Of a DNA stretch of 64,000 bases, positions 4,100 through 63,077 are shown one piece after another; the stretch's first letter is position 1; every line of letters starts with the position of its first letter. A model generated the notes under the pieces. That model did no database searches. It saw nothing but the letters and a program-made list of their open reading frames with translations, and was not told where the DNA came from. The stretch is from Saccostrea echinata (Eukaryota). The DNA is taken from contig NW_026889803.1 in NCBI RefSeq assembly GCF_033153115.1, forward strand, positions 27,342,001 through 27,406,000. The letters are read 5' to 3'. The position numbers and the translations under genes were made by a program.

Positions 4100-7000
4100 T
4101 CAGACAAAAACATCTTCACTGTCACAGGCCAAAGAAATGTGTCTTTCTTCCTGAATATTAGACAAGTCAGAATGAGATTGAGTTTGTCGTCTGCTAATTT
4201 GATTGTTCAGACGTTGGTTCAGGTCTCCAAGTGACCTTCTGTATGAATTATCTGGTGATCTTTGATTCCTGGTTTCCTCTGGATTCAAATGAGAATGAAT
4301 GGGTAGATTTCCAACAGAAAGGGATATGGGGCGGTCCTTCTCCAGGGGGCGTGGCTTGCTTATTCCATCTTCCTGCCTTGTGTTTGATTGACTACTTGCC
4401 AATCCTCCAGTTGGATGGTCTGAATTTCCCAGAGTGAGGCTACTCCTTGAGGCAACACAGTGTGTAGTGGGTAGATGCTGTAATGAGGTAGCCATTCCTC
4501 GTCTGTCCTCTGTCCATCTCTCTATAGGATGCAAACTGGAAAGGCTGGCTGAATTTGTCCTGGGTGGTGAATCTTTTGATCGATCATCAGAATCTTTAAA
4601 ACCTTGATTTAGTATGCCCCTATGCTCTCTATCTGTAAAGTGATCCTCACTAAAAAGCAAACCCTTGGAGCTGCTGTCAGATGCTCTATTTTTCCGATCC
4701 TCTTTCGATTTTGTTTGCTTTCTTTCCCTCAAATCTTCATTTTTGTGATATTTCTCTTCCTTGAAATTGGGTTGATTTTTGGAAGAATCTAAATATTGGT
4801 TAGGTTTCTGTCTTGATGGACTGCCTGAAAAATTCCCTCTTGCAGTGGAACTTATGTCTCCCTTTCTCCCAGGCTCTAGTCCTTGCATGTGCAAAGATGT
4901 TCCTTTTCTATACTGTATTTGGTCTGATTGATGATCATATGGTTGTCTCTCTGAATTTTCTCTCACATCATTATCACTTTTTTGTCTTTGAGGATGAAAG
5001 CTTCTTCCTTCAATTTGCCTTCCATCTTTTGATCTGCTGGGGACCCTTTCTGTATACTCATGCTCACTCCTCTCCCTGTTTGAGGTTCTGGACCCTCGAT
5101 TAGGTACCTCACTGTAAGAGGGACTATGAACTTTTGGGACAGATCGGTTCAGAGGTAGGTCTGTGGATGATTCGGAGCTGTAAGACATACTGTATGTATG
5201 ATTAACGGGTCTAATTTCACCACTCTCTGCAGGAGGTGAGGTTGATGTTTGGGCTTCAAAGTTTGGTTGTTGACGTTCTATAGTGCTAAATTCTGGTGGT
5301 GGGTAGTCCTCCTCAATGTATTCTTCTTGTGGGGCCTCCACTGTCTGTCCTACAGCCTCATTGTATGTGGGTGGTTTAAGTACCCCATTTTCATATTCCT
5401 GGTAATAAATAATGAATCATTTTGAACCAAAACATTTTACTTATAATTTTCAAAGAAATCTTTTTAAGCTTTGTAATAAACAGGAAGTTGGCATTTACCA
5501 GTGGAGGTTCTTCATAGGGGGGACTTTCCAGTGCCTCCTCATAGGTGGGAGGGAAATCCACAGGCCTCTGAGCCTGTCTACCTCTACGACCTCCTAAAGG
5601 GAAACAACTCTTTATTACTGCGTCCACTCAGAAATATTTTTACTTTTTATTTCCTTTCTTGTCTATAATTCTAAACAATTAAACCCTTACAAATCAAGCA
5701 GAAATACAGAAGTTTTACCAGTACGTCTTCTTTTTAGTGCTACATTTACTATGTGAAATACTTTAACCCACTATTTGGACATTACACTTTCGATCAGACC
5801 AATTTTCCTCCCTTACTTCTATTACTTATTCCTCCACTGATCGTGGGTATCCCTGATTCTCTGTCCATCTCCCGTGCTCGTGCAATATGACATCGTCTTA
5901 TAAGGAAGAAGAGAACACACAAGATGACGAGGAGGAAAACAGAGATGACGAGCGGAACGATGACACTGACTGTCATCGTGTAGTTAGTGCTCCGAGTATA
6001 ACCGGATCCTCCACCTGGTCAAATCAGATAAAAATAGATTTAAGAAACATTTCAAACTACTGTCAGAGGTTTTACCCTACTTTATCTTTTCATTTTTAAT
6101 ATCATGGACCACTTAATCAATAATAAACTCAATATGAAATGAAATGTATGATGAATATCCCACTTAGACATTTAGAGTTGAGTTCATCAGAATTATCCCC
6201 ACAATGGTTATATCTATCACACTCGAGCTCGCCAGGGATACATCGGCCATTGTTACAGTAAAACATTCCCCTTCTGCCACAGTCTATAAATAAATGAATC
6301 ATATTAATATGAATGATTACTTATAAATTCAATCTTAGCACAGGAGCAACGGGCAGCATACAAACTCATCAACTTCACCTATAATGTACTGAAAAAGAAT
6401 TGAAGTAGTTATTAAAGAAACATATCAAAATCACAATACATGTACTTAAATATTACAGTAAACCATGCCTGTTTTCAATAGTAAGAAGAGAATCACAATT
6501 TTTTTTTGTTCTAACATGACGTACACAACAGGACTATGTGTACAATTCATTCTAAGGAATGTTTAATGTCTTCCAGATTTCATACATATCATTTGCCATA
6601 AGCTTATTTTTTGTGGCTTTTGCCAAATGTGTATCTCTTCCAAATTTCTGAAGTGCAGCTAAAGGGGAAGGACCTTAAAGGTGCTTGGACACAGATTTGA
6701 AGTTAATATTTTCTCAAATTTTCTGTAAAATTTTATGACTTATATGTTGCTATAGCATTTCATACTAAAATATAATAAAAATCTTATTTCATCTCGAAGT
6801 TATTGAAACTTCAAATTTCTGAACGCGTTTGATTGACACATCCTTGCACTTTCACAATTTTTAATTTTATTCTTAATACTTAAGAAAAGTGGCAATTTTG
6901 TTGTGTATTAATGAAAAAAATTAAAACTATAATCCAGAAAATTCAGAGTAGAAATGTTCGAAAGCAAAACCCACTCACAGTATTGTCAGTCCGTGCTCAG

Positions 7001-29350: not shown

Positions 29351-30225
29351 CGTATGTAATACCCACTGGTGTCCTTCAAAAAGCCAAAGTCCAATGTGTG
29401 GTCAAAAATAAACAAAAATGCTGGCTCTTGCCATTCTGCCAGTTGTGTGCCAAATTCCATAAAGAACAAATATCAACGAACATACATGGAAAATTATATT
29501 TTTCACGATCATTTGTATCATCGTTATGATACAATTGAAAGAAACATAATTATTGCACACTGAAAACAAGTTGTGTCCGAATATATATATACAAGTATCT
29601 CTTAATATTTTAAATACGTTAAATTCAAAATGGTATTAAATTTGCAAAAGTTCTTTACTTCAGCGAAGCGTAATGTAAAATTGCACATCGACCCAGATCG
29701 GAAATCGATAGATTTGTTGAAAAAATCGTTATTCAGACCCATGTGATCTACATTGCCATGAGTCATAAATGTATCTAGTCATAAGATGAAGAAAAACGTA
29801 AATGCAAATATTATTTGTTTACTCTTAAAGATACTCATTTTTAATGTTTCACAGCGAAATTTCTGAATACATAATACTTAGGCCCGGGTACTGGGCAAGC
29901 AACATTTCGGGGGGGGGGGGGGCATATTCAGATTTCTAAATATGTTCCCTTGAAAATGTATTAGAGGACGCGGACACATTCAGAGCTATTTGGACCAATA
30001 TGTAATTTTGTGTATATGTAGTGCTATTTAATAAGTCTCTTGTAGCTATTAGACTTAAATTATTAGTGTAGACACGTGAACTGTCTATCATTATTTCAAA
30101 AAGGATAGGTTAACTTTGTTCTTTTTCATCAAAATGCCTTTTCTTCCGAAGATGCATCAAACGTATTCACAGTCGTCAAAGCATTTAAAATCTGTTAGCG
30201 GTTGTTGCATATTTGGGGTTGTTGA

Positions 30226-30786
30226 AGGGGCTGGGACACAGATTTGAAGTTAATATTCTCTAAAATTTTCAGTATATAATATCATGATTTATATGTTGCT
30301 AGAGCATTTTACGCAGAAATATAATAGAAGCGTGTTAAGAAACTTCTTTTATCTGCAATTATTAAAACTACGAATTTCGGGACACGTTTGATTGACACAT
30401 ATCCTTTCACTTTCATGAAGTAAACTTTATCCTTAATATATACTTAAAAGTAGAAATTTTGTTGTGCATTAATGAAAAATATTAAAACTATAATCAAGGA
30501 ATTCAGAGTAGAAGTGTGAGAAAGCAAAACCAACTCACCAGTATTGTCAGTCCGTGCTCAGTGATGTGTACAAGGGTAAACAAATGGAACACATGCGATA
30601 AAACGTAAACACTAACAATAACAAAGCTTGTGCCCTGTTTACAAAGACAAATGTTTGACGTGATGTAAAAAAGAATGTCGCTGTCATTGAATTCTAAGAA
30701 TATTCGTGTAAGTTTAATTCATTTAACTGAATTTAGTTTTTGAATAAACAAGGAATTTTTAAAATGTCAACTGTGTCTAGGCCCAT
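30226..30786 (+). mobile_element. Non-palindromic member of the TTAA (Kolobok-like) MITE family
   Basis: The first ~415 bp (AGGGGCTGGGACACAGATTTGAAG...GTGCCCTGTTTACA) match the left arm of 6679/59833. The remaining ~140 bp are unique and end in the short TIR CTGTGTCTAGGCCCAT|TTAA. Confidence 0.75.
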
Positions 30787-30859
30787 TTAATCTCAAATGG
30801 AAACACGTCAATGAGATTTGTAGTTTGTTACTGAAAGGAATCGCATGTTGTTTTGTCAG

Positions 30860-31560
30860 TAATCAATGTTGTTTGTGGTTGTTGTCTTCACTGTTTTTGT
30901 AGAGATAATGTCAAGAATTTTCCTTGAATGTTGTCCTGGCGAAGGGTGTCAAGTATTGGGTGTACATGTATTTATGTTGTATTGGTGGAGGTTGATGTTG
31001 TACATTTTTTGGGTATATGTTGTTTTGGCGAAGGGTTGTTATTGTCCAGTATTTCGTGTGATTTCACTGCATTGGCAAAATGTAAGCTTGATGTTTGGAC
31101 AAAGATCATTTTTGTCATGAAAGATTGTTGTCTGTATTTGTTGTTTTGGTTTAGGGCTGTGTTGTTAATGTTTTGGTTTGTGTTGTTTGGGTGGAGGGTT
31201 GGTTTGGTGTTGTCAGAGTTTTGGTTTGTGTGTTTGGGTGAAGGGTTGCTGTTGTCTAAGAGTTGATGTGTTTGTGATGTTTCATAAAGGGCTAGTGTTG
31301 TAAAAGCTCGTCTATGTTGTTTTTCGAAGGGTTGGTGTTGTTAAGGTTTTGGTAGGTGTTGTTTTGGTGAAGGGTTGATGTTGTCAAGGTTTTAGTATGT
31401 TTGTTGTTTTGGTGAAGGATTGTTGTTGCAAAGTTAGTGTTGTGTTGTTTTAGTAATGGCGTTGTAAAATTTGTGTTGTCAGAAATTCGGGATAATATGT
31501 TGTTTTGATGAAAGGTTAGTGTTTTTAACATTTAATATCTGAATGTTTTGTCGTTGTAGC
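30860..31560. repeat. Degenerate G/T-rich low-complexity tandem repeat
   Basis: Recurring GTGTTGTTTTGGTGAAGGGTTG-like units with strong G+T strand bias. Confidence 0.6.
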
Positions 31561-34413
31561 AAAGTGTTTGTGTCGTAAGCTATAGTATATTTGTTTGTGC
31601 AGTAAGGGTTTTATTTGTCCATTTTTTTTTAAATTACTTATTTAATCGAATGATCAAATCAATCAAATGATGTGTTTAAATGAGAAGGCTTTGTATTGGT
31701 TTCGTGAAGATGTAGCATATTTAATTAAATATTTTGGCATGGTACCCTATGCTACAATAGATTTGTTCATTCTCGCCAGTTAGAAAGTTTGTTGAGAGTT
31801 TGGCTAAAATTACCGGGTATTGTTTGTGTAAGTGAAGATTTGTAATTGACTGGTTCTAGTTTGGAATAGTGAACAAAAATGTACAGATCTTCAGATGTGG
31901 TCTCTTGGTAAGTTTGAGCTACTATTTTTGCGAGTCGAGCGTTTGTAGTGTTTGAGTATATGTATATTTATGTAAATATTGTAAGAGTGTTCTTGGGTTG
32001 ATAAAGGCGACTGTGCATACTTTGATTTATCTTCACTGCCAATCAGTGAAAAGTTTTTAAAAAAATTGTTTTATCATGTTTTTGATATATGGATTTATAC
32101 AAAGAAGAATGAAAATTAAAATTGTATTCTGTTGGTTTAAGGCGAGATATTGCTTTTTGCATGTGCCAAGTTATGTTTACTGAGCGTCTGCGAAGAACTT
32201 ATAGAGATTACATGCTTGTATTGTTTTTTGGTTTTTGACCTTTTTTCTCATGCTACTTCTATACTTTTTTTTTTAAACTTGACCAAACTTGATCTATTTT
32301 ATCTTAGCAATAGTCCCGCAATTCATTGTGTTGATCATTTGTAATTAGTCCGTAGGATAATTTTATTTAATCTATCATCAATTCAAATGCATTTTTAAAA
32401 TGATATTTTGTATTTTCTGGTGCTGTGTACAAGGTGGAGGAATGATACATATATGAATGTAAAAACTTTGTATTAAAAAATCTGAATAAATAATAATTGC
32501 ATCCGCTGTCATTCTAAGATTTTTCCAAATAAACAACTTGAATAGAGCGACAAAAATACCCCTCCTGTGCTAGCAAAGATAAGAACAATCAAAATCGTTG
32601 CCTAAATAAGCCAACCTGCTTGAAGCCCACGCTCAATACAACTCGCCGTCATACGAAACCTCATCAAATTGACAAGGATGAAATAATTCATGATGTAATT
32701 TGATTCTGTAAAAAAGAATTCTTAAGGAAGCTCTAAGCACTGCTCACTGAAGAGTTCTAATTACTTAGCTTGAGTGGTCTACCCTTTGATGTAAAATAGA
32801 ATAAATGCATGGAAATATGCAGGAAATGACACAATATAAAATAGAATAGAGTATTCTTAACATAATAATAGAGCAAGATAAATTTATTGAAAACATTATT
32901 TACATGCATTTTACAAACTAAGTAAACAAAGCGATTTATGTTCACTAACACTTCATTGTCTGAGAATAATTTTTCATGTAGAAATATGGGAGGTACCCTT
33001 GTTGAGAATGAACGAGATAAACTCAACGTACAACTTTAAGGTAGTCCTCAGGTTCAGAAAATCAGCTTTTCAGTAATTGCAAATTCTCACCAAAATGTCT
33101 AGGATGTCACAGAATAACGTGTATTTACCCATGGTATTTCTTCAAAGTTCATCACTAAAGTTAATCATATAATATAGGGAAAATTATCAGATCTCCGATA
33201 TATTTTCAGTAAATGCGAATAAAAGCACCAGCTATGGATTTTCTACTTGAAAACTGATCAACAAATATATTTTTGGATTCAAAATTATAGGTATCCAGGC
33301 ATTTGGAGAAAATTGCATGTTTTGCACACTTATACAGTATTTTAGTTCTGTTTACTTCAATTGTTATAGAATACATAGTGTAAAAAGTTTTTGTTAGCAT
33401 TTCAAGACATCCCAGATTACTTCTTATTTCATATCATGTTAATAAGCGCCGGGATCTAATGCTACATTGTAGGAAATTTCATTTCTCTAAAAATGAATTT
33501 TATTTTTTTACTTTTGTGGGGTACAAATTTCAACTTTTTATAATATCATTTCTAAGACTTCAAAGAACCATAAATCATATTGAGATGCATAAAATGAAAA
33601 TTGTTGCAAGAAAATATTTCAATTTCAAGCTTTATTTTCAGACTTTTTAAATTAAATAATAGATTTAAGAGTTATCATTCCTAGCTGAGGATCGGATATC
33701 CTTAAATGATACTATTTCCTCAAAACCCCAAAACTTAAAAAAAAAAATAAATAAATTCGACGGTCGATATTCCATAAGGAGGCTTTTAGAGTGAAGGTTT
33801 AAATTCAAATTTGCTGGTAATACGAGAGATAGACAGATACATGAAATTGCCCATAAAAAGCTAATTGGATGTAGATTAAGAGATTAAGTGTTTAAACGTA
33901 TAACTTAAACCTGTGTAAACGTTTTATTGGAGATAAATATAACCTGAAGACATTTACATTGTCGATTTGTACATGTAGTCTGTTCCAACAGACAAGAAAG
34001 TGTCTTTTCAGAATTTTTTAAGCCGCTATTAAAAAAACACTTCGATAATGTTACAATAAAAACAATTTGCAAGAAATTGGAAGGAATGGCCTTATTAAGG
34101 AAAAAAGACAATAGACATATAATCGATGAACTGTACAATAAAATCTGTTATGATTTTGAACTGAGGAATACAACATGCATATATATGAAATACATTTGCA
34201 ACAGCATTATTGCCACTAGTATCGGTTTCAGAAGTTTACAACTATGTAGATACACCTGTAACTACTTTATAAAAGGACGTAGTACCAGGATGTTCAAAAT
34301 CCACTTAACATACTGGGCACTCTGATGTTGTCATAATCAGTGTAACTCTGCATTATTTTTATTATTCTTTTTTTGTGTATGTAAAGGCACATGTACATTA
34401 CATATTTGACATG

Positions 34414-35688
34414 TCAAGAGAGGGACTTTACATTAACAATAACAAAGAAAATAGCCCCAACTATGATGACACTGGCCAAACTGGTCATAAAACAAATTTT
34501 GTCAAGCCTTGATGATATCTTTTTCCATGTTATAGGAGATATTTCAGGGATCTCGAAAGCAACTTTTGTCATTTCTAGATCTTTTTCTGTTGTTAAATTG
34601 TCTACACTTCCAGAACTCTTTTTGCAGGAACCACAAGAAAATAAATTGTAACATCGCATAAAAAATGGCGATATTTCCTCCTCTTCCTCCTTGTGATGTA
34701 CACGAAGAATGAAGATTGTCTCCACGCAGATAAGACCGGAAATCATAAGATAAGTGGCCAAAATATACCCTATCACTGGCATAGGCTTGGATACTTGCGG
34801 TAGACCATCTGATACCAAGGACAGAAAGACCGCCAAAGCGAGAAGACACGTGATGGAGTACCCTACACGTTCACCACTATCTGCTGGTAAAATAAACACC
34901 AAAGTGTTTAACATCAGCATTACAAATACTGGAATAAAAAGATTGACAACGAAAAACAAAGGGCGTCTTTCCAGATTGAGGTTAAAGACCACGACCGAGT
35001 TTTCTCCAAGAAGCTCAAACTTGGTTTCTGTGGATGCCAAAACCCAGGCTCCATTTTCACTGTAATGAGTTAAATCGACGACCGATTGCGATGGATACAT
35101 CAAGACCTCATTTTTGTTATAATCCCAGACCATGATTTTCATGCTGCACGTTTGTTTGTCAAAGGGAAAGTACCTTGTGTCAAAATCACACGTTGTTTGG
35201 TACCTATCGGCAATGTTCCAGTAGGCATTGCCGTCGGCGTAGTATTTGATTTTCGATTGTTTGAATCCTAAAAGACCCACATTTGTGGACATAGGGTTAA
35301 GAAATGTCATTGGTGGCTTCCACACAAGTGACTCGTCGATATTAATCGAAAAGGTTCCTCCATACGAAAAGGGATTCCACTGAATAACTTCGTCACGCCA
35401 GTCTATGCTGAAACTTCCTACACTGACCACTTCGCTGGTCACTTCGTCTACATTTGCGATGGTCAGCAAATGGAACGCTAACGTAACGTTCATGGCATTG
35501 TTCTGGTCAGTCACGGGTCTGGCATCCTTATTGTAACCAGATAAAACCGCGGTGTGAACGCTGTTGTATTCTGTCAGAGTCCCTCCGTCAATTTTTGGGG
35601 GGAGTAACAATAAGATTATAAGACATACAAATCTGACCAACCCATGTGTCATCATCACTGCCATAGGAGTTTTCTGATGTGTTTCCAT
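34414..35688 (-). CDS. Intronless nicotinic acetylcholine receptor-like (Cys-loop ligand-gated ion channel) subunit, non-alpha type, 424 aa
   Basis: Single ORF with a signal peptide, GYNKDARPV, W..P loop A, Cys-loop CDFDTRYFPFDKQTC, ENGAW, M1 RRPLFFVVNLFIP, PADSGERVGYSITCLL, M3 and M4 ending RLDKICF. No vicinal Cys in loop C. Confidence 0.95.
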   Translation of the reverse strand: METHQKTPMAVMMTHGLVRFVCLIILLLLPPKIDGGTLTEYNSVHTAVLSGYNKDARPVTDQNNAMNVTLAFHLLTIANVDEVTSEVVSVGSFSIDWRDEVIQWNPFSYGGTFSINIDESLVWKPPMTFLNPMSTNVGLLGFKQSKIKYYADGNAYWNIADRYQTTCDFDTRYFPFDKQTCSMKIMVWDYNKNEVLMYPSQSVVDLTHYSENGAWVLASTETKFELLGENSVVVFNLNLERRPLFFVVNLFIPVFVMLMLNTLVFILPADSGERVGYSITCLLALAVFLSLVSDGLPQVSKPMPVIGYILATYLMISGLICVETIFILRVHHKEEEEEISPFFMRCYNLFSCGSCKKSSGSVDNLTTEKDLEMTKVAFEIPEISPITWKKISSRLDKICFMTSLASVIIVGAIFFVIVNVKSLS

Positions 35689-47992: not shown

Positions 47993-48524
47993 AATATATA
48001 CTTTGTATAAAATTAATTCTTTGCATTATATTCATAATAGACTGGTTTTAAGTTATAACAATACTATGCCTTATGAAGGCATAAAATTATAGGGGTGAAA
48101 AAAATCTAAAATGCATTTAATTGCTTAAACATGATGAAATATCACTTTTTTTGTTAAAATGATTTGGAAGCACTGCTGTATTGTTGGAAATGAGGTGTAA
48201 ATTACATCTCATACATCAATGCAGAAATATGTACATCTAACGTGTAAAAAAAAAAAATAGAAGCAGTAAGTACATTGTACTTATAAATAAAACCTAACAC
48301 CAACTGGCTATCTACAACAATTAATAATCAAAACAGAGCACAACATAACTACTCTAGATTCCGATATAAGCTATATATGTAAAACTCTTATATATATGTA
48401 TTTAAAGAAAAGTACATAAATAAAATGTAAATAAAAAATCATAAAAAATATACACATGCCTTTCTAATAAATCTATCTTATAAATCAGGTACTGGTAACT
48501 AATATTACAGAACTTATTTTTGAT

Positions 48525-51500
48525 CTACATCAATAAAGAGTGGTTAGCTATAACAGTATCGCCTTCCTCCTCTAAGTCCACTTCCTTACAAAGTGTCAAA
48601 GCCTGCATCTTTTGTTCCAACATTTCTGTTTGTATCTGAAAATAATGATATAAATATTATATATCACTCGATCAACACAACAAAACAATCATTACCAGAC
48701 AAATATGTGATATAATCGTATATATAGAATACCTGTTGTATACATGTATTAATTTTTTCAATGTAAAATACTTCTTTCATTAAGTTGATAAATAAATTAT
48801 TAATTTATCTGATCATTAAAAAGTAGAAAAACAACCATAACTTTTCTCTTCTTTTTTTCTTTAAATTTTAGTGTATTTTATTCTTGCTTGGTAGAACTGC
48901 AATCTAGAGCATTAAATATCCCTTTCAAAATGTATTTCTACTCACTACAAACAGAGCATGCATGGGATATAGAGAGCAGGTATAGTATCATTATTTTCAT
49001 GATTTAACTGATGGTGTTACAGTATAGTGTGTTATGGATAGCTATTTTTGCTACAAATTGGGGTAGACTATTCCTGACATTCATTATACATGTAATGTGG
49101 AATAATTAATAATACAGTAAAACAAGCTTATAGTAAATTAAGTGCAAGGGATTGGCAATTTCTGATCGTAATAAGTGTTATTTGCTATATCTGATGTGCT
49201 TTAAGTACCGCTTCAGAAATTGCAAAAATGAAAATCACTTTGTGAATTCATTATAAGCGTTTTCGCTATAACCATGTTTTACTGTATTGTACTAGTCGTG
49301 TAATAATTTCTTTCAATTAAACAAACTGCTACACAAATGTTAGTAATGTCTGCAAATGCAGTGTTACCCATAAAGAATCTGTATTAATCAGCTGAGCTAT
49401 GCTACTATTAACTACATGTACTACTAAGAGGACAGTCATTTTTTAGTAAATAAAAAGCTGTGTTTCACCAACTGCCACATATAATCAGTGCATATAACTC
49501 ACCTAACATTTGATATAATGTAGCTGACCTGCAATATACACTCAGAAAGCAAAAATATCCATATACAATTGGTATACTATGTAAAATTGTTACAACCTAG
49601 CATATGTACCAGTACTTCAAAATTCTATATCACAACATTTATCACTATTTGTTTATTTTCTTTTTTAAAAACCATATCAGTCCCAATGACATCAGTGACA
49701 ATCCAAATATCAACCCCTTATTTTTCCAGAATCTCAAGATTCCCCCCTCTGTATTTTCAACTCTTATCTTTTCAACTCTTATGTTTTCAACATTTTCAAC
49801 ACTTGTCTTTTCATCACTCTCACTACAGGGCTTCACCTGATCGTCCAATAGAATTATACGTCCCTCAACCTCAGGGGAAAGATGACATTGTTCCTCTTCC
49901 TCGTTATAGACGCTCTTTTGACGACTCAGGCGACGCTCCAGTTTGGATATGGTGGCTGCTTGGTCCAGTTTGCGGGCCATGCTCCGTTTTCTGAGGTTAG
50001 AAATAAACTTCTGCACCAGCCCTCTCTTCCTGATGTCCAGTTAGTAGTCCAAACAAAATGCATGCAAAAACACAGAAACACAAAAGTAGGAATACAAACA
50101 TTTGAACAAAAACAAACAACAAATTCATGCAAAAACAAAAACAAAAGGGCCATGGCAAAAGTCAGGGCAATTTAAGTCAACAATAACATCATAAAACTAG
50201 GCTAAATTCTTTCATTATAAATCCTCTTGACTAAACTCAAATATCTTTTTTTTTCATGCTTATATGCATTCCACTGTTTCTCAGTCAATATTATAGAGCT
50301 TTGAAACTGCAAGGCTGGTTATGTCTAACAACTTTTAACAAACAGATAATTTGCTCTTCTTCTGTTTGATCCCATGGTTTATTTAACTTAAATTTTTCCT
50401 TAAAAAGCTTCAATTCACAATTGGGCTAAAAGAAGTGAGTGTCACTGACTATTTGTTACATTTTATAGATATTTAAATGATAATTTTTTTTCTACCAGTT
50501 GATTTGACAATTACTCCTGATCAAAAACAATTTTTTTAACACATTCATAGTGGCGGATGTTGTCAACTAAGCTTAATATTTTGCATCTGTTTTCTATAAG
50601 AAAAAAAAAAAAAACAACCAAAACTTGCATTTTTGGGAGGGGGGGGGGGGGGGATAATTTGGCACTGTCTTAAATAAAGTTTGAAAAAATGTGTTTTCCA
50701 CTAGTCAACACAAAATTCTCCTTAGAATAAATTCAACAAAAACATATAGTTCATCCACAAATCCATTAAGAATTCACTGAATACAAATGATTTTATCCTC
50801 ATTCCCCCAGTTAGTGAATACATGAACATGTATTTAATACCGAGCATATACCAACCTAACTAGCCCCACTAGACTTTGTCTATGACCAGACTTGCATTCC
50901 TTGACACCTTTCATGATCTGAATGGATTCAAAATGGTTTCTCACTCCTGTACTTAGTGAACAACACTGCTCCGAGGTTACCTTGTGTAAGAAAACAATAA
51001 AATATAGAGAAACATTGACATATATGTAAATATGGTCAACTTTCATTAACAGTCAAGACTATTTCATTACAAGATGTACTTATCCGAGTACCTGTTAATC
51101 TTATTTTGAAACATTTTCATATATTGTAGCTTGTAGTAAATGTGTAACTTTATAACTCAAGATTCAGAAAAAAAAATATCCATTATATAAATGAGTTTTA
51201 CTGGATATAAAAAGGCTTTTTTAAAAGTATATCAAATACCAAATAAAATTTTAAATGTAAAGTACATGTATCATTTATCTTGGATACCTGTTATTACAGT
51301 TTCACTAGCCATGGGTAACAATTTGCTCTCCTTCTCTTTTGAAAAGAGGAGGGTCACCCTTAACCAGTGAAAGAGGAGGCAAGCAGATTACCCTTGGCTG
51401 GTGAAAAGGGGACTCTCACACTTGGCTAGTGAAAGAGGAGCTATATCGAGAAACAATAAGTGAAAAGAGGAGAGAAGCGAATTGTCTTCCTTGGTAAGTG

Positions 51501-52749
51501 AAAGAGGAGAGGAACAAATTGTCATCCTTGACTAGTGGAGGAGGAAAGAAGTGGATTGTCTCCCTTGGTAAGTGAAAAAAAGAAAGGAGCAGGTTGTCAT
51601 CCTTGGCTAGTGAAAAGAAGAGAGGAGCAGGTTGTCATCCTTTGCTAGTGTAAAAAGGAATGGAGTAGGTTGTCATCCTTGGCTGGTGTAAAGAGGAGAG
51701 GAGCAGGTTGTCATCCTTGGCTAGTGAAAGATGAGAAGAATGGATTGTCTCCCTTGAGTAATAAAAAGAGGAGAGAGCAAGCTGTCATCCTTGGCTGGTG
51801 TAAAGAAGAGAGGAGCAGGTTGTCATCCTTGTCTGGTGTAAAGAGGAGAGGAGCAGTTGTCATCCTTGGCTGGTGTAAAGAGGAGAGGAGCAGGTTGTCA
51901 TCCTTGGCTGGTGTAAAGAGGAATGGAGCAGGTTGTCATCCTTGGCTGGTGTAAAGAGGAAAGGAGCAGGTTGTCATCCTTGGCTAGTGAAAGATGAGAA
52001 GAATGGATCGTCTCCCTTGAGTAATAAAAAGAGGAGAGAGCAAGTTGTCATCCTTGGCTGATGTAAAGAAGAGAGGAGCAGGTTGTCATCCTTGACTGGT
52101 GCAAAGAGGAATGGAGCAGGTTGTCATCCTTGGCTGGTGTAAAGAGGAGAGGAGCAGTTGTCATCCTTGGCTGGTGTAAAGAGGAGAGGAGCAGGTTGTC
52201 ATCCTTGGCTGGTGTAAAGAGGAGAGGAGCAGGTTGTCATCCTTGGCTGTGTAAAGAGGAGAGGAGCAGGTTGTCATCCTTGGCTGTGTAAAGAGGAGAG
52301 GAGCAGGTTGTCATCCTTGGCTGTGTAAAGAGGAGAGAAGCAGGTTGTCATCCTTGGCTGGTGTAAAGAGGAGAGGTACAGCTGTCTTCCTTGGCTGGTG
52401 TAAAGAGGAGAGGAGCAGGTTGTCATCCTTGGCTGGTGTAAAGAGGAAAGGAGCAGGTTGTCATCCTTGTCTGGTGTAAAGAGGAGAGGAGCAGCTGTCA
52501 TCCTTGGCTGGTGTAAAGAGGAGAGGTACAGCTGTCTTCCTTGGCTGGTGTAAAGAGGAGAGGAGCAGGTTGTCATCCTTGTCTGGAGTAAAGAGGAGAA
52601 GAGCAGGTTGTCATCCTTGTCTGGTGTAGAGAGGAGGAGAGAATATCATTACCCTTGGCTGTGTAAAGAGGAGAGAAGATCATCATCCTTGGCTAGTGAA
52701 AAGAGGATAGAATTGAAAAGAGATCATCACCCTTGGCTAGTGAGAATAG

Positions 52750-52783
<34 letters not shown>

Positions 52784-53959
52784 CACATTGGCTAGGAAAA
52801 AAAGCAAAAATCAGTTACAGTATTGAAAAGTTTACAGGGAGGGGGGGGGGGGGGTGTTGAATTTTAAACTACCTGATGATGCTTTCATATCAATATAACA
52901 AATGGCTTTGTTGTTCTTGAGCAGCAGATTTTTTTCCCATATATTCATTTGTAAAAATTTGATCCCCCATTGTGGCCCCACCCTACCCCCGGGGGCCCTC
53001 ATTTGAACAAATTTCATTCTACACTACCCAAAGATGCCTCCATATCAATTTGACTAATCATGGCTTTTCTGTTCTTGAGACTTTTTCCTATATATTCCTC
53101 TGTAAACTTTGATCCCCCATTGTGGCCCCACCCTACCCCCGGGGGTCATGATTTGAACAAACTTGAATCTACACTACCTGAGGATGCTTCCATATAAATA
53201 TGACCAATCATGCCTTTGCTTTTCTTAAGAAGAAGATTTTTAAAGATTTTTTCCTATATATATCTATGTAAAACTTTGATCCCCCATTGTGGCCCCACCC
53301 TACCCCCGGGGGTCATGATTTGAACAAACTTGAATCTACACTACCTGAGGATGCTTCCATATAAATATGACCAATCTTGGCTTTACTGTTCTTAAGAAGA
53401 AGATTTTTAGAGATATTTTCCTATATATTTCTATGTAAAACTTTGATCCCCCATTGTGGCCCCACCCTACCCCCGGGGGTCATGATTTGAACAAACTTGA
53501 ATCTACACTACCTGAGGATGCTTCCATATAAATATGACCAATCTTGGCTTTACTGTTCTTAAGAAGAAGATTTTTAGAGATATTTTCCTATATATTTCTA
53601 TGTAAAACTTTGATCCCCCATTGTGGCCCCACCCTACCCCCGGGGGTCATGATTTGAACAAACTTGAATCTACACTACCTGAGGATGCTTCCATATAAAT
53701 ATGACCAATCTTGGCTTTACTGTTCTTAAGAAGAAGATTTTTAAAGATATTTTCCTATATATTTCTATGTAAAACTTGGATCCCCCATTGTGGCCCCACT
53801 CTATCCCCAGGGGTCATGATTTGAACAAACTTGAATCTACACTACCTGAGGATGCTTCCACATAAGTTTCATCTTTCCTGGCCCAGTGGTTCTTGAGAAG
53901 AAGATTTTTAAATGATGCCATTATTTTTTCACTAATTCCTAATTATCTCCCCTTGAAAG

Positions 53960-54134: not shown

Positions 54135-57100
54135 TTTGAGCCTTTGGCTCAGGTGAGCTAAAAAGCAGATTGTTACCCTTGGCTAGCAAAAAGAGATGAG
54201 CAGACTGTCACCCTTGGACAGTGAAGATGTAGCAATTAAGGAAGACATTTACCAGTATTAATCCAGTATATGCATATTTAAATTTCTTAGAAAATTCGAT
54301 AAAATGCTTTCCTTACCAACACTGGGCAATTCTTGAAGACATCATATCCATCCTTGCCCTCTGAAAGGTACTCCTTAGTGCAGAGTTTGTATTTCTGTTG
54401 AAAAATTCACAAAGTTAATTCAAAAAACTTTCAGTTTTTGCAGTTTTTTACCTCATATGACAAGATATTTTCTGACAAAACACTAGTTAACTTTATATCA
54501 CTATGCATTTTCAGAGATAAAAAACCTCAAACTTTTCTTCGGCACATGTTCAAGTTCATAGTAGTGCTTGTAATATTTTGCATTTAGAATAACGCCATTA
54601 CGCATTTAAATTATATAAATAATCTAATGCAGAAGCTATTAATAGTATCTTTTATGTGAATTTAAACCTAGTAAGCTTTTGATTGGTCGGTAAATCCATC
54701 GGTTGAAATTTTTTTTTATCTAGATATTAAATTCCTCCAACATTTCAATGCTACTTAATGTATTACCAAAAATTCACACATTTTTAGCATTGCAAACTTT
54801 TCAAAACAACCAACAGCTTACTTACAACTTTGCATATATTAAAAATGGTGTCATCATTTCTAAAAGAGAAAGTTCAGCCACTTCAGTGCACACTCAAAGT
54901 GTAATGTAAGAAAATAAATGTACTAAATTTCTGATGTTCTGTGTAATTGAATGTGTGATGTAAGATTATAATAAAATTGTGTGGTTATTACACTAGTTTC
55001 CTCAAACTCTTACCATAAAATGTTGGAAGACACCCACAAAACTTAATTAGATTAACAAAACAATATCCCAGTGGATTACAATGCTTTTTGTATTCACCTT
55101 TTCCATACTGGAATATAATCAATTTGAATATATTCAAAGTTTATGAATATCTGCATATAAAACTGGTAAATTAGCCTTGCAATTCTTGAAAATTCTTGAA
55201 AAGTTAAAGTTAAGAATAAATACTTATACATACAGTTGAAGTTCATTATCTCTAACACTGATATCTCGAATACCAGGTATATGTTGAAGTGAGTTGGCAG
55301 TCCCAACCATTTATTTTTTTTTATGTTTTAACCATGGTTATTGTATCTCAAATCATCTGATATCTCGAAGTTAAATCTTGAAGTTAAATTTTGGTCCGTC
55401 GGATTCGAGATAACAAGATTTGACTGTACAATGTAAGTTTTCTCTTTTTAAGAAATAAGGCTTTCCTCTGGAAGAATGCACAGTATGAGTAGTCTTACTT
55501 TTTTTAGATCGATAAATTGCCCTTGTACTTTGACCAGCTCTGGATCTACTCTCTGTCCTTTAGGCTTGCTGGGATTAAATCCAAAGGTAATGCCTGCCAC
55601 TTGAGGGAACCGACCTTCCAATTTGGGGTATGCTGACACACCATTTTCTAATGCTTCTATTAACTGTTTTCCTGTTTAAATGTAAAATCATGTTGATTTA
55701 GGTTAAAACAAGACACAAATTTAGAAACTTAGAAATACACTAGAAATAAGTGCAATAGACATACATGTATATAACCAATTCTTGCATGGTCACATTTCAG
55801 AGTTAAATTTATGAAAAAGCCATTCTTTGAAAAATGAGCTATTGCAACAGCACTTTGCAAATTGTGATTGGCTTAAAAACTAGAGAGGAATTTAATAACT
55901 AACTCTATGTTCCCAGCAATACAGGTGGCAAATGTCAAAAGATTCATTTTGTATACAATCCAGAATAAATATTACTCCAGTTGAATGAAATGCTGCTCAG
56001 CATAAAGTAATAACGATGATATTTCTGTCCCACAATACTTGATCCTAAACCCCGCTTGCTTCTTAATATATCCTCTTACCAGTGACTTCAATGACTACCA
56101 GCTCATCCACCAGGGGGAGTATGGTGAGTAAATCGCGGAGTTTGAAGCGGCCTTTAGGGTGGATCCTGTCTGATCGGAATGTCCCAGAATTTAGAATAGC
56201 ACAGTCAGCTTGAGAAATCTCCAACATAATGTCTGTCACAAAGTTTCCTACAAAGAATAACACAAGCCAAGTCTTTCAAAATGAAAAATGTTAAAATGTT
56301 TCAGATACATACCCCATTACTGGTATATGCCTTTTATAGTACCACAATGCATCTGATTTGCTCAATCATGCTAAAGACTCCATTCAAACCGATGCCAGAT
56401 TTGGGGAGAAACTTACAATTATTAATGGTATGTATCATCTTTAAACATAAGCAAAGATATCAATGTGTTGCTAGAGATATGGTATATGAATAAAACACAG
56501 TTAAATTATATAAAAACAAAGACTACCAGAATTTCTGATAAACATACCTAGATTTGTTTCCCTTGATCTTATAGCAGAGAATCTGCCATCAAGTTCCACA
56601 TTCATATATCCCAATACTTCTTCCATTTTACTGTTAATGTCACCTAAATATAAGTACAATCAATATATTACATATACATTTTGTAATGAAAAACTTGATA
56701 AAGTTGATATTTTATATAATTTACAAAAAAAATATTATCCTAAATCACTGATGACTTCTTATTATTAGGTCTGACAAGAGATCAATTCCTTTTTCACTAT
56801 CAATAAAATGTTATATCAACCTTGCATATGTTTGACAATTTCCAAGGTTTCTGGATCCTCTGTGATATTAGACGTGACGTCCACCTTCTCAATGTCCACA
56901 TGAAGGCGAAGTCCATTCCTCTTAATGGTGATCTTACTAAGGTTACGGAAATCAGTTCCACTTTTCACAATGTTGATGTCATTAACCTAGGAGATGGAAA
57001 TATATTTGACTAATTTTTCTTCAAATGAATTTTTTTTTTACATTTGATATTTTGTATTTCTTATAGAAAACGATGCCTTAAAAGGCAATTTATGTACATA

Positions 57101-59053
57101 CACAATTTTCTTTCAAGTTTCAACATGACATGATTTTCACTGCACTTGAAGAAAAAAAGTAACTATTAAAAGGAAATTTGTCATTGTATTTCAAAATAAT
57201 TTGATAAAAGGGGCTTTTTTAACATGAAATAATCTTTCCAATGATTTATGAAAAGCCAGTGTATGAGAACACTCACTATCTCTAGACCGTAGTCATGATC
57301 ATGACCTGCAAGTATGATGTCAATATCTGGTACTTGTTCTGCAAGGTGCCGGTCATTTGGCCATCGCATGTGAGTCAAGGCGACAATTAAATCAACTCCC
57401 TGAAATTTACCATGCACAATCATAAAAAGTTGTAGTTAACTGAAATCTGTGAGAAGTTAATGCAGAATATTTACACAAAGAGCAACTATATTTAGAGTAT
57501 TTACCTGTACCTGTATTTAGAGGTTAATTGAACCTTAACATAAAAATGTGTATAATTGAAATCTTAACAATTTCTTTTTTCCAACATTTCTGACACATTA
57601 AGTTTTATAAAGTCTACGAACACAAAAATGAATGAACTGTAGGCCTTTTATCTCTGACAATTTTTTTTTACTTGTGTTCCCCCTTTAATCATATATAAAG
57701 TGATTTAATTCTGGGTTCATAGCAGGTAACACTACTTAATTGTTTTACAGCTGTTTTTTTTAACTTTACAAACTGAAAAAAGGTGTTCTATAATTATGTT
57801 TCACTTAAAATGAAAAAAAAAAGAAATAAACAGTGTAAGAGAATGCTACCTTTTGCTTTAAATCCTTGCAGAGTTCTTTCCCTTTAGAAACAAAATCTAT
57901 ATATGTAACATCTTCTGGGTCCAATGTTGCTAGAGTATCAATCCACTCCTCTTCCACTAAGCCAATCACTCCTACCTAATAAAAATAAAACAAACACCTG
58001 AACCAGAATTGTACTTTTAATGCTTATTAATGCTTTTCACTTAAGAGAATCATCTTTGCTAACCAAGGGTTTCTGATCCACTCCACTCCTCACAAACCCT
58101 TGGGCTTACAAGGAGTGAATTAGATCAGAAAACCTTGGCTAGCAAAGATGTAATAGTTAATAGTATGTTCTTATTTACAAGTATACCTCTTTATAGCCTT
58201 GTACAGGTTAATAATGATAAACACCCTTACCTTATACCCATTCCATTCAATAACACATGACTCCTGTCCATCTGCCAATGATTTTTTGGTCAAGTTGTCT
58301 GTAACATTACTGAGTAACCATGGAAACTTGGTCTTCTCTGTCATCTCACACAAATGATCAACTCCAAAATCTAGCAGTTAAGATTACAGGTATACAATAT
58401 TTGACCTTTGAAACAATTAAATATCAGAACACTCATACTCTTCGTTTCACTTAATTTTTACAGTTAATATAAACAAAAATCTAAGTTTTATCCAAGAAAA
58501 ACATTTACCAAAGTCATGATTTCCAAACACTGCAGCATGTGTGCCTACTGCATTTAGGATTGGTATCATCTGTTCACCTTTTAAGAATATGCTCACTTAA
58601 AAAAAAAAAAAAAAGAGTGAAGTTTTAAAACATTTAGATTTTTAGTTTTGCATAGTGTATACAAATGCTATTTAAATTTGAAATATGAAAACCTTACTTT
58701 TTCTCATTCAAAAGTTTTGACCAAGGTTACAAGTTTCTGTGACAGACTTACAGAGATCAACAGACAGACTGAGGTTAAATGTCCCCTCACTTTATCCAAA
58801 GTGGGGGACAAAACTATCAACATGATTATGACATGTACATAACTTATGATAACTATTATACATGAAATTTCAAAAATGACTTACACAATGAAGGATTCAG
58901 TACATCCCCACTAAACAGGACCAGGGGGTTCAGTGACTGGTAGGATTTGACACAGCCAACAAATCTAGCAGCCCCACCCACAGGCTCATCTTTCTGAGGT
59001 TCAAGGTTATATACATCATTGAAGTGAAGGATTACTAGATCATTTTGTGGCAT
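48525..59053 (-). CDS. 5'-nucleotidase / calcineurin-like metallophosphoesterase without a signal peptide (CG11883/YfkN-like), ~571 aa, with alternative C-termini
   Basis: Exons 59053-58885, 58595-58509, 58370-58231, 57975-57850, 57399-57277, 56986-56821, 56643-56548, 56247-56080, 55671-55499, 54394-54317, 50980-50856, 49990-49837, 48635-48525, all phase-consistent. Motifs HFNDVY, GGAARF, SGD, GNHDFD, LTHM, GHDH, RSRETNLGNFVTD, NSGTFR, EGRFPQVAG, GKDGY. Confidence 0.9.
49115..49284. mobile_element. Small pogo/Tigger-like MITE
   Basis: TA|CAGTAAAACA...TGTTTTACTG|TA. Confidence 0.55.
49503..49528 (-). CDS. Predicted 26-nt alternative microexon of the 5'-nucleotidase gene (frameshifting)
   Basis: tatattgcag|GTCAGCTACATTATATCAAATGTTAG|gtgagt, with a canonical acceptor and a consensus donor. 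Confidence 0.55.
49645..49836 (-). CDS. Alternative terminal coding extension of the 5'-nucleotidase encoding a tail-anchor TM
   Basis: Open in frame past the CAG|GTGAAG donor: VKPCSES...RFWKNKGLIFGLSLMSLGLIWFLKKKINK*. Confidence 0.65.
   Translation of the reverse strand: MKPCSESDEKTSVENVENIRVEKIRVENTEGGILRFWKNKGLIFGLSLMSLGLIWFLKKKINK
51340..54226. repeat. 38-bp purine-rich minisatellite (~37 units), interrupted near its end by a Helentron
   Basis: Consensus GAGCAGGTTGTCATCCTTGGCTGGTGTAAAGAGGAGAG. The centre (51660-52620) is homogeneous and the edges are degenerate. Two further units follow 54165. Confidence 0.9.
52750..54164 (+). mobile_element. Helentron-type non-autonomous element with ~6 copies of a 167-bp satellite monomer (Cg170/HindIII-like)
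   Basis: 5' box ACAAGAGGCCCATGGGCCACATCGCTCACCTGAG; GATCCCCCATTGTGG at 52961, 53111, 53278, 53445, 53612, 53779; (GAC)n/GACA microsatellite; 3' hairpin AGCTCATTTGAGCCTTTGGCTCAGGTGAGCTAAAA. Confidence 0.9.
55233..55426. mobile_element. Small pogo/Tigger-like MITE
   Basis: TA|CAGTTGAAG...ATTTGACTG|TA with internal ATCTCGAA repeats. Confidence 0.55.
58051..58150. repeat. 100-bp hairpin element
   Basis: CATCTTTGCTAACCAAGGGTTTCTGATC...GATCAGAAAACCTTGGCTAGCAAAGATG. Confidence 0.7.
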
Positions 59054-62510: not shown

Positions 62511-62684
62511 ATTGTACTGGACCTGTATATGAAACATGTCAATTGCTTTTGAACTCTAAAGTCCAATCATTTTATCAGAAATAAATCATATTTCATCAAT
62601 TGTGACACAAATTTGGTATTTTACACTTTAAAAATGCTTCAGCTTGTAAATGTATAATTTATTGTGGACACATTTTATGTAGGC

Positions 62685-62930
62685 ATGGCCCCAAAGAGGA
62701 ACAACGTTATCCCGAATGGGCATTTTCATAAAGACTGGCAGCGCTATGTGAGGAATTGGTTCAACCAGCCTGCCAGGAAGAAGAGGAGGCATGATAACAG
62801 ACTTAAAAAGGCACGCCGTATCGCTCCCCGACCTGTAGCAGGTGCTCTTAGACCAATTGTTAAATGCCCAACTTTTAAATACAACACTAAAATCAGGGCA
62901 GGCAAGGGATTCACACTGGATGAGTTGAAG
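62685..62930 (+). CDS. RPL13: 60S ribosomal protein L13 (eL13), first coding exon; the gene continues beyond the window
   Basis: tag|GC ATG; [35 protein letters not shown]...[21 protein letters not shown]; donor AAG|GTAAAT at 62931. Confidence 0.97.
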
Positions 62931-63077
62931 GTAAATCTTGTTAACAAAATAAACTTGAATTCAAAAAAATAAGCTCAGTTGCTGATTGACTGTGTCATTT
63001 AAATGTACGTGCTAGAATAATGGGGTATGAAATATAATTGTGAAAAAAGATAGTTTTCAGTAGGCCCAAATTATCAA

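What the first reader, a model, noticed from the sequence alone, without database searches (positions are those of the whole stretch)
48525..49990. Predicted three-way splicing switch sending one 5'-nucleotidase to the cytosol, a membrane tail-anchor, or peroxisomes
Seen in sequence: after the last conserved exon (...GRIILLDDQ, donor CAG|GTGAAG at 49837) three outcomes are open. (a) Splicing to the final exon (48635) in phase 0 gives an acidic soluble tail, IQTEMLEQKMQALTLCKEVDLEEEGDTVIANHSLLM*. (b) Ignoring the donor reads on in frame to 49645 and ends ...RFWKNK-GLIFGLSLMSLGLIWFL-KKKINK*. (c) Including a 26-nt microexon with canonical sites (49528-49503) shifts the final exon into another frame, giving VSYIISNVRYKQKCWNKRCRL* (stop 48598-48596). 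Established knowledge: a short, moderately hydrophobic C-terminal helix flanked by basic residues is the signature of mitochondrial-outer-membrane/peroxisomal tail anchors, and [SAC][KRH][LM] preceded by basic residues is the PTS1 peroxisomal import consensus, which CRL fits. The protein has no signal peptide. Inference: one locus may direct a nucleotide phosphatase to three compartments, using a dual-frame terminal exon. I know of no description of this for the family.
Basis: partly seen in the sequence, partly recalled or inferred. Interest (0 to 1): 0.85.

Follow-up and report, generated by a model that had tools for sequence, protein, structure and literature searches.

The report
Oyster phosphoesterase with alternative C-terminal tails
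An oyster gene for a cytosolic enzyme of the 5'-nucleotidase family can end in a membrane anchor, a soluble acidic tail or a short frameshifted tail. The same three endings are already annotated for the Pacific oyster orthologue, and the proposed peroxisome-import signal on the third tail is not conserved.

Summary
All three outcomes have counterparts in the orthologue, Magallana gigas LOC105337745. Isoform X1 ends in the read-through tail with a hydrophobic helix. X2 ends in the acidic tail. X3 includes the microexon and reads the last exon in a shifted frame.

The helix tail is conserved in every oyster lineage found: 17-18 uncharged residues followed by six residues with net charge +4, and the same stop position. 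It also stands in spliced transcript ORFs. The acidic tail is 50% identical to X2 in frame 0 only.

The microexon is conserved but is 26 nt here and 25 nt in M. gigas, so the shifted frames differ. The -CRL ending occurs only in this species, and the M. gigas and second Crassostrea tails end -SRS and -KND. The PTS1 reading is therefore probably chance.

The exon begins at 50029.

I found no paper on the gene.

Verdict: a real splicing switch between a tail-anchored and a soluble form. It is already in public annotation but unstudied, and localisation is untested.

The parts
55499..59053 (-). Coding exons 1-9, holding the Metallophos and 5_nucleotid_C catalytic domains. The protein starts at MPQNDLVILHFNDVY (ATG at 59053) and has no signal peptide.
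   Evidence: Pfam hits on the exon ORFs. tblastn of M. gigas X1 gives 80-92% identity exon by exon. Exon 9 ends AAA|gtaaga at 55499.
54317..54394 (-). Exon 10, 26 codons in phase 0, carrying the end of the 5_nucleotid_C domain (KYKLCTKEYLSEGKDGYDVFKNCPVL).
   Evidence: Sequence with caacag| and |gtaagg. It is 93% identical to M. gigas X1 residues 415-441.
50856..50980 (-). Exon 11, the start of the family-specific C-terminal extension. It ends with the two bases AG of a split Arg codon, at a weak donor AG|gttggt.
   Evidence: It is 84% identical to P0003 and X1. M. gigas isoform X4 stops right after this exon.
49837..50029 (-). Exon 12, the shared part, ending ...GRIILLDDQ. The main acceptor is cag|G at 50029. 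It carries an invariant RRxSRQxS motif.
   Evidence: The spliced ORFs P0003, P0029 and P0047 join exon 11 to this acceptor. Alignment A1.
49990..49992 (-). Alternative acceptor ctcag|A, with the exon then starting at 49990. It removes 13 residues (KRGLVQKFISNLR) and keeps the frame.
   Evidence: The M. gigas ORFs P0053 (transcript assembly) and P0050 (UniProt A0A8W8JYE4) lack exactly this segment.
49831..49839 (-). Alternative 5' splice site CAG|GTGAAG. It lacks the consensus G at +5 and T at +6. The second copy of the locus has GTGAAT.
   Evidence: Q-V is invariant at this junction in all read-through tails.
49645..49836 (-). Read-through coding extension of 63 codons plus the TAG stop. It consists of a variable linker, basic residues, the hydrophobic helix and a basic end.
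   Evidence: It is conserved in P0001-P0004, P0018-P0024, P0029 and P0047-P0055. The second copy differs by an in-frame 6-nt indel in the linker.
49666..49716 (-). Predicted tail-anchor helix of 17 uncharged residues (GRAVY 2.09), followed by KKKINK (49665-49648, net +4).
   Evidence: Across five oyster sequences the helix is 17-18 residues, GRAVY is 1.86-2.12 and the tail is always six residues at +4.
49503..49528 (-). Microexon of 26 nt (VSYIISNV plus 2 nt), flanked by ttgcag| and |gtgagt. Including it shifts the last exon to offset 1.
   Evidence: It is homologous to VMYIIQNL of M. gigas X3 and to ECVLQVMYIIQNL of A0A8W8JYE4, with 9 of 13 residues identical at 49543-49505. It is single-copy in the genome.
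48525..48635 (-). Coding part of the last exon. Frame 0 gives the 36-residue acidic tail (net -6, stop at 48527-48525). After the microexon, offset 1 gives RYKQKCWNKRCRL (stop at 48598-48596).
   Evidence: Frame 0 is 50% identical to the M. gigas X2 tail (E 4e-08). The other frames are not conserved.
48877..48882 (-). AATAAA inside the last intron, about 765 nt after the read-through stop. It is a candidate poly(A) signal for the anchored form.
   Evidence: Its use is inferred and not shown.
48116..48121 (-). ATTAAA about 405 nt after the stop of the acidic tail. It is a candidate distal poly(A) signal.
   Evidence: Its use is inferred and not shown.

Best explanation
The 3' end of this 12-exon gene is an alternative-processing module that sets the C-terminus of a cytosolic phosphoesterase of the UshA/CD73 family. 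After the shared codons ...LLDDQ there are three routes. In the first, the weak donor at 49837 is not used. Translation runs 63 codons further into a linker, a 17-residue helix and KKKINK, making a tail-anchored protein with its catalytic domains facing the cytosol. By mammalian rules a +4 tail charge points to peroxisomes and/or the mitochondrial outer membrane rather than the ER. In the second, the donor is spliced to 48635 and gives a 36-residue acidic tail and a soluble protein. In the third, the conserved 26-nt microexon is included, the frame shifts, and the protein ends in a short basic tail that has neither anchor nor acidic tail. Its exact sequence, including -CRL, is not under selection. 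Shown here: the sequence features, their conservation, and the existence of all three isoform types in the sister genus. Inferred: use of each route in this species, membrane insertion, which organelle, and which poly(A) site serves the anchored form.
For: The sequence features were checked. Family assignment rests on Pfam domains, PDB matches down to E 2.6e-40 and NCBIfam. The read-through tail is conserved in all oyster ORFs found, with the same stop position. It stands in spliced ORFs: P0003 spans three exons, and P0029, P0052, P0053, P0054 and P0055 are full-length ORFs from transcript assemblies. RefSeq isoforms X1, X2, X3 and X4 of M. gigas LOC105337745, plus two isoforms of a second Crassostrea, carry the three tail types. 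The acidic tail is 50% identical in frame 0 only, with alignment score 81 against 11-15 for the other frames. The microexon homologue sits at the expected place, with canonical splice sites at the homologous borders. Published mean tail charges are 6.0 for peroxisomal, 2.5 for shared, 1.1 for mitochondrial and 0.2 for ER tail-anchored proteins (PMC5450235).
Against: I could not see the evidence behind the RefSeq models. Every full-length ORF from a transcript assembly that was listed carries the helix tail, so the acidic and microexon forms may be minor. The helix is short, and its 19-residue hydrophobicity (about 1.5) is no higher than that of two buried strands of the enzyme. The targeting rules come from mammalian cells. 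The enzyme's substrate is unknown, and its first metal-binding motif is NDVY rather than NDxH.
Confidence: 0.75

Rival explanations
1. The microexon isoform ends in a working PTS1 (-CRL) and is imported into the peroxisomal matrix, so the locus serves three compartments.
For: -CRL fits [SAC][KRH][LM] and follows basic residues. The microexon itself is conserved and annotated in M. gigas.
Against: The microexon is 26 nt here and 25 nt in M. gigas, so the last exon is read in different frames. The tails end -CRL, -SRS and -KND, have lengths 21, 29 and 15, and share no similarity. No PTS1 predictor or PEX5 test could be run.
Confidence: 0.07
2. Only the helix-tail form is functional. The acidic and microexon forms are splicing noise or over-annotation.
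For: All five listed full-length ORFs from transcript assemblies carry the helix tail. The profile searches of fragments found no other tail.
Against: The acidic tail keeps its frame, length (36 versus 37 residues) and a CxEVDLEEE core across genera, while the other frames of the same exon decay. The X2 model has persisted through three RefSeq versions. The microexon region is better conserved than the coding linker.
Confidence: 0.12
3. The hydrophobic C-terminus is not a tail anchor. It could be a GPI-attachment signal as in CD73, or a hydrophobic helix for protein-protein contact.
For: CD73 relatives carry a hydrophobic C-terminal GPI signal (established knowledge). The helix is short and rich in Gly and Ser, and its hydrophobicity is borderline.
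Against: There is no N-terminal signal peptide in the window or in any orthologue model, so the protein cannot reach the ER lumen for GPI addition. A conserved +4 basic end follows the helix, which is typical of tail anchors and not of GPI signals.
Confidence: 0.06

Closest known systems
Magallana (Crassostrea) gigas LOC105337745: RefSeq isoforms X1 XP_019926774.1, X2 XP_019926776.3, X3 XP_034337802.2 and X4 XP_065935041.1, plus UniProt A0A8W8JYE4
   Same: It is the orthologue. The catalytic exons are 80-92% identical and the exon plan is the same. It has the helix tail (X1), the acidic tail (X2), the microexon with a shifted last exon (X3), and both acceptors of exon 12.
   Different: The tails are only about 50% identical. 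The microexon is 25 nt rather than 26 nt, so its frameshifted tail is in the other frame and ends -SRS rather than -CRL. The gene is named by similarity only (YfkN-like, or mannosylglucosyl-3-phosphoglycerate phosphatase), and I found no paper on it.
FALDH/ALDH3A2 splice variants (FALDH-ER and FALDH-PO) and other tail-anchored proteins routed by tail charge (Costello et al. 2017, PMC5450235)
   Same: Alternative C-terminal exons change the tail of a tail-anchored enzyme and so change its organelle. A moderately hydrophobic helix with a strongly basic tail favours peroxisomes or mitochondria.
   Different: In this gene, splicing removes the anchor altogether and gives a soluble acidic tail, rather than swapping one tail for another. 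The enzyme family is different, and nothing has been localised.
Ecto-5'-nucleotidase CD73/NT5E and bacterial UshA or LPXTG-anchored 5'-nucleotidases
   Same: It has the same two-domain fold family (E 1e-21 to 1e-40 against solved structures) and is attached to a membrane or surface through its C-terminus.
   Different: Those enzymes are secreted through a signal peptide and face outward, held by a GPI anchor, an LPXTG motif or the periplasm. This protein has no signal peptide, so its catalytic domains would face the cytosol. Motif I is NDVY rather than NDxH.

Membership tests
UshA/CD73 5'-nucleotidase family (Metallophos + 5_nucleotid_C) | Both Pfam domains are present in the usual order. | tested here: met
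   Window exon ORFs hit PF00149 weakly (17.2 bits, below the 21.5 cut-off) and PF02872 above its cut-off. The orthologue P0047 scores PF00149 at 9.3e-12 and PF02872 at 6.8e-40. The PDB match to 2z1a has E 2.6e-40.
UshA/CD73 5'-nucleotidase family (Metallophos + 5_nucleotid_C) | The full set of metal-binding motifs (DxH, GD, GNHE/D, H, GHxH). | tested here: inconclusive
   GD, GNHD, THM and GHDHD are present. Motif I reads NDVY where 2z1a has NDTH (alignment; window exon 1). The Tyr is also in all M. gigas isoforms.
UshA/CD73 5'-nucleotidase family (Metallophos + 5_nucleotid_C) | Hydrolysis of 5'-nucleotides. | not testable with these tools
   RefSeq names differ (YfkN-like, or mannosylglucosyl-3-phosphoglycerate phosphatase) and rest on similarity only.
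Tail-anchored membrane proteins | A single hydrophobic helix within about 30 residues of the C-terminus. | tested here: met
   The helix has 17 uncharged residues (GRAVY 2.09) and lies 23 residues from the C-terminus. The same holds in four other oyster sequences.
Tail-anchored membrane proteins | No signal peptide and no other transmembrane segment. | tested here: met
   The N-terminus MPQNDLV runs straight into strand 1 of the phosphatase domain. The only other hydrophobic peaks are core strands of the two domains. No dedicated predictor was available.
Tail-anchored membrane proteins | Post-translational membrane insertion with the N-terminal domain in the cytosol. | not testable with these tools
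   This needs fractionation or imaging.
PTS1 peroxisomal matrix proteins | C-terminal tripeptide [SAC][KRH][LM]. | tested here: met
   The tail ends -CRL in the microexon frame of the window and of its second copy.
PTS1 peroxisomal matrix proteins | The signal is kept in orthologues. | tested here: not met
   M. gigas X3 ends -SRS and the second Crassostrea ends -KND. The reading frame of the last exon also differs.
PTS1 peroxisomal matrix proteins | PEX5 binding and matrix import. | not testable with these tools
   No predictor or experiment was available.

The most novel reading that the evidence does not exclude
In this oyster lineage a one-base change in the microexon has put a working PTS1 (-CRL) at the end of the frameshifted tail. 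One gene would then place the same phosphoesterase in the cytosol, on the cytosolic face of peroxisomes or mitochondria through the tail anchor, and inside the peroxisomal matrix.
Probability: 0.07. Interest if true: 0.7.

Novelty: new member of a known kind. Interest (0 to 1): 0.4.

Why it matters
Enzymes of the CD73/UshA family are known as secreted or outward-facing proteins. Here an invertebrate branch lacks a signal peptide, faces the cytosol, and appears to be tethered to an organelle surface or released from it by the choice of 3' end. If the anchor is confirmed, phosphoester or nucleotide hydrolysis would take place on the cytosolic face of peroxisomes or mitochondria. The gene would also be a natural test case outside mammals for the tail-charge rules of tail-anchor targeting. 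It further shows that a PTS1-like ending in a frameshifted tail can arise by chance. The isoforms are already in public annotation, so what this adds is an interpretation, not the discovery of the transcripts.

Tried and rejected
- **Metagenome scan.** A scan for related loci found nothing.
- **First attempt to reach full-length relatives.** I aligned E. coli UshA with the separate exon translations (A2). The fragments scattered and the alignment was not searched.
- **Second attempt.** I used an unrelated 433-residue protein (P0006) as the first row of alignment A3, only to move the length window of the search for homologous proteins. The tail sequences made up the remaining rows. This is a workaround, and it also returned relatives of P0006, which I ignored.
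- **Second copy of the locus.** Comparison with C30 gave no test for the last exon, because divergence is near zero for more than 2 kb there, intergenic DNA included.
- **My own early errors.** My first guess for the exon 12 start (50010) was wrong. So was my prior that the microexon was a chance match (20%, stated).
- **Atlas search.** The search on the C-terminal extension gave only sub-threshold bacterial rows.
- I reran it by reference.

Full report
**What is there.** The finding lies at the 3' end of a minus-strand gene of about 12 coding exons (59053 down to about 48100) in an oyster genome. The window is contig C54 of a 923-Mb assembly. The exon ORFs carry the Metallophos and 5_nucleotid_C domains. 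The full-length orthologue matches both domains (PF02872 at 6.8e-40) and solved 5'-nucleotidases down to E 2.6e-40. The protein starts MPQNDLVILHFNDVY, which is already the first strand of the phosphatase domain, so it has no signal peptide.

**Checking the observation.** Every feature is at the stated place.
- The donor CAG|GTGAAG follows 49837.
- In-frame read-through runs to TAG at 49647-49645.
- The acceptor at 48635 gives a 36-residue acidic tail that stops at 48527-48525.
- A 26-nt segment, 49528-49503, lies between cag| and |gtgagt.
- Including that segment puts the last exon in a frame that ends ...KRCRL, with a stop at 48598-48596.

One correction is needed. Exon 12 starts at 50029, not 49990. 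A 165-residue ORF from a transcript assembly of a related oyster (P0003) maps to the window at 54340-54320, 50983-50855 and 50034-49648. It is therefore spliced, and it joins exon 11 to the acceptor cag|G at 50029. Other orthologous ORFs (P0053, A0A8W8JYE4) lack exactly those 13 residues.

**The read-through tail.**
- A HMMER scan of 1.8 billion representative proteins with the read-through exon found only oyster ORFs. All of them end in the same design: a variable linker, basic residues, 17-18 uncharged residues, six residues with net charge +4, and a stop at the same position.
- A profile search added more such ORFs and none with any other ending.
- The helix has GRAVY 1.86-2.12 in five sequences.
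- The second copy of the locus in this assembly (contig C30, 95.5-96.7% identical and collinear) differs in the linker by a 6-nt in-frame indel. Indels in the following intron measure 4, 7, 9, 9, 4 (at 48997), 15, 1 and 3 nt.

**Orthologous isoforms.** To reach full-length relatives I shifted the length window of the homologue search by placing an unrelated 433-residue protein as the first row of the tail alignment. This returned a 608-residue spliced ORF (P0029). Its 90% cluster holds the RefSeq isoforms of Magallana gigas LOC105337745 and of a second Crassostrea. After ...LLNDQ the endings are as follows:

| Model | Length | Ending after ...LLNDQ |
|---|---|---|
| X1 | 599 aa | Helix tail |
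| X2 | 586 aa | 37-residue acidic tail |
| X3 | 578 aa | VMYIIQNL, then a shifted reading of the last exon ending -SRS |
| Second Crassostrea | 564 aa | VMYIIQNI, then DKNRKND |

X4 (484 aa) stops after exon 11, upstream of ...LLNDQ. All five listed full-length ORFs from transcript assemblies carry the helix tail.

**The acidic tail and the microexon.** The window's acidic tail is 50% identical to the X2 tail without gaps (E 4e-08). Frame 0 scores 81 against it, while the other two frames score 11-15, and their stops fall at different places. The acidic tail is therefore also a selected reading.

The microexon has a homologue at the expected place. ECILQVSYIISNV at 49543-49505 matches ECVLQVMYIIQNL with 9 of 13 residues identical. 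That E-value is 0.62 over the whole window, and about 0.006 by my own rescaling to the 1.2-kb intron. The region is single-copy in the genome.

**The PTS1 reading.** Reading the M. gigas last exon from both X2 and X3 shows that X3 uses one base of the microexon plus the first two bases of the last exon. Its microexon is therefore 3n+1 (25 nt), whereas the window's is 3n+2 (26 nt). This is my inference from the protein sequences. The two species read different frames. Their tails are 21, 29 and 15 residues long, share no similarity, and end -CRL, -SRS and -KND. The -CRL ending fits the consensus but is a feature of this species only, so it is most simply explained as chance.

**How it probably works.** The donor at 49837 lacks the consensus +5 G and +6 T, which suits a regulated site.
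- If the donor is skipped, the mRNA encodes a tail-anchored protein. An AATAAA at 48882-48877 inside the intron could end that transcript (inferred).
- If the donor is used, the product is either the soluble acidic form or, with the microexon, a form lacking both tails.

In mammalian cells, mean tail charge is 6.0 for peroxisomal tail-anchored proteins, 2.5 for shared peroxisomal-mitochondrial ones, 1.1 for mitochondrial and 0.2 for ER ones (PMC5450235). Lowering the tail charge of ACBD5 from +4.9 to +2.9 moved it from peroxisomes to mitochondria (same paper). A conserved +4 tail with a moderately hydrophobic helix therefore points to peroxisomes and/or mitochondria. This is inference across phyla and has not been tested.

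**Limits.** The support for splicing in this species is conservation of sites and frames, together with annotation and transcript ORFs in a sister genus. I could not inspect the evidence behind the RefSeq models. Exons were searched separately and by reference, and the joined spliced model was not searched.

**Known or new.** The isoforms are in RefSeq and UniProt for M. gigas under similarity-derived names. Searches for the locus name, for YfkN with oyster, and for tail-anchored nucleotidases found no relevant paper. Splicing that changes or removes a tail anchor is a known kind of switch, the FALDH variants being one example. I found no paper describing a tail anchor in this enzyme family.

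Noticed in passing
window 59029-59021 (exon 1); P0047 residues 12-15: The first metal-binding motif of the phosphatase domain reads NDVY where solved 5'-nucleotidases have NDxH. The Tyr is also present in all M. gigas isoforms. The other four motifs are intact. This could change the metal or the chemistry of the enzyme.
   Followed up: partly
window about 49940-49915 (exon 12); alignment A1: An RRxSRQxS motif resembling a basophilic kinase site is invariant in all oyster sequences. It lies just upstream of the alternative tails.
   Followed up: no
window 50029 and 49990: Two acceptors 39 nt apart add or remove 13 basic residues (KRGLVQKFISNLR). Both forms are seen in M. gigas ORFs.
   Followed up: partly
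window 51460-52707 and 53083-53912: The 3.3-kb intron between exons 10 and 11 holds a 38-nt minisatellite (about 33 copies, 84% matches) and a 167-nt array (5 copies, 95% matches). The copy on contig C30 differs in array length.
   Followed up: partly
G000 C54:27342001-27406000 versus C30:35866000-35885900: The whole locus is present twice, collinear and 95.5-96.7% identical. Other 5_nucleotid_C loci also come in contig pairs (C44/C38, C12/C49), so the assembly may hold both haplotypes. Divergence drops to about zero over window 48.7-46.3 kb.
   Followed up: partly
window 62664-62969 (+): The first coding exon of ribosomal protein eL13 (PF01294, E 6e-37) lies about 3.6 kb upstream of the phosphoesterase gene on the opposite strand.
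   Followed up: no
window 34414-35688 (-): An uninterrupted 424-residue ORF carries both Cys-loop receptor domains (PF02931, PF02932). It appears to be an intronless ligand-gated ion-channel gene.
   Followed up: no
window 4100-5341 (-) and 30001-32000: A 413-residue ORF has no Pfam match. Separately, a 2-kb stretch shows strong G-over-C skew (0.38).
   Followed up: no
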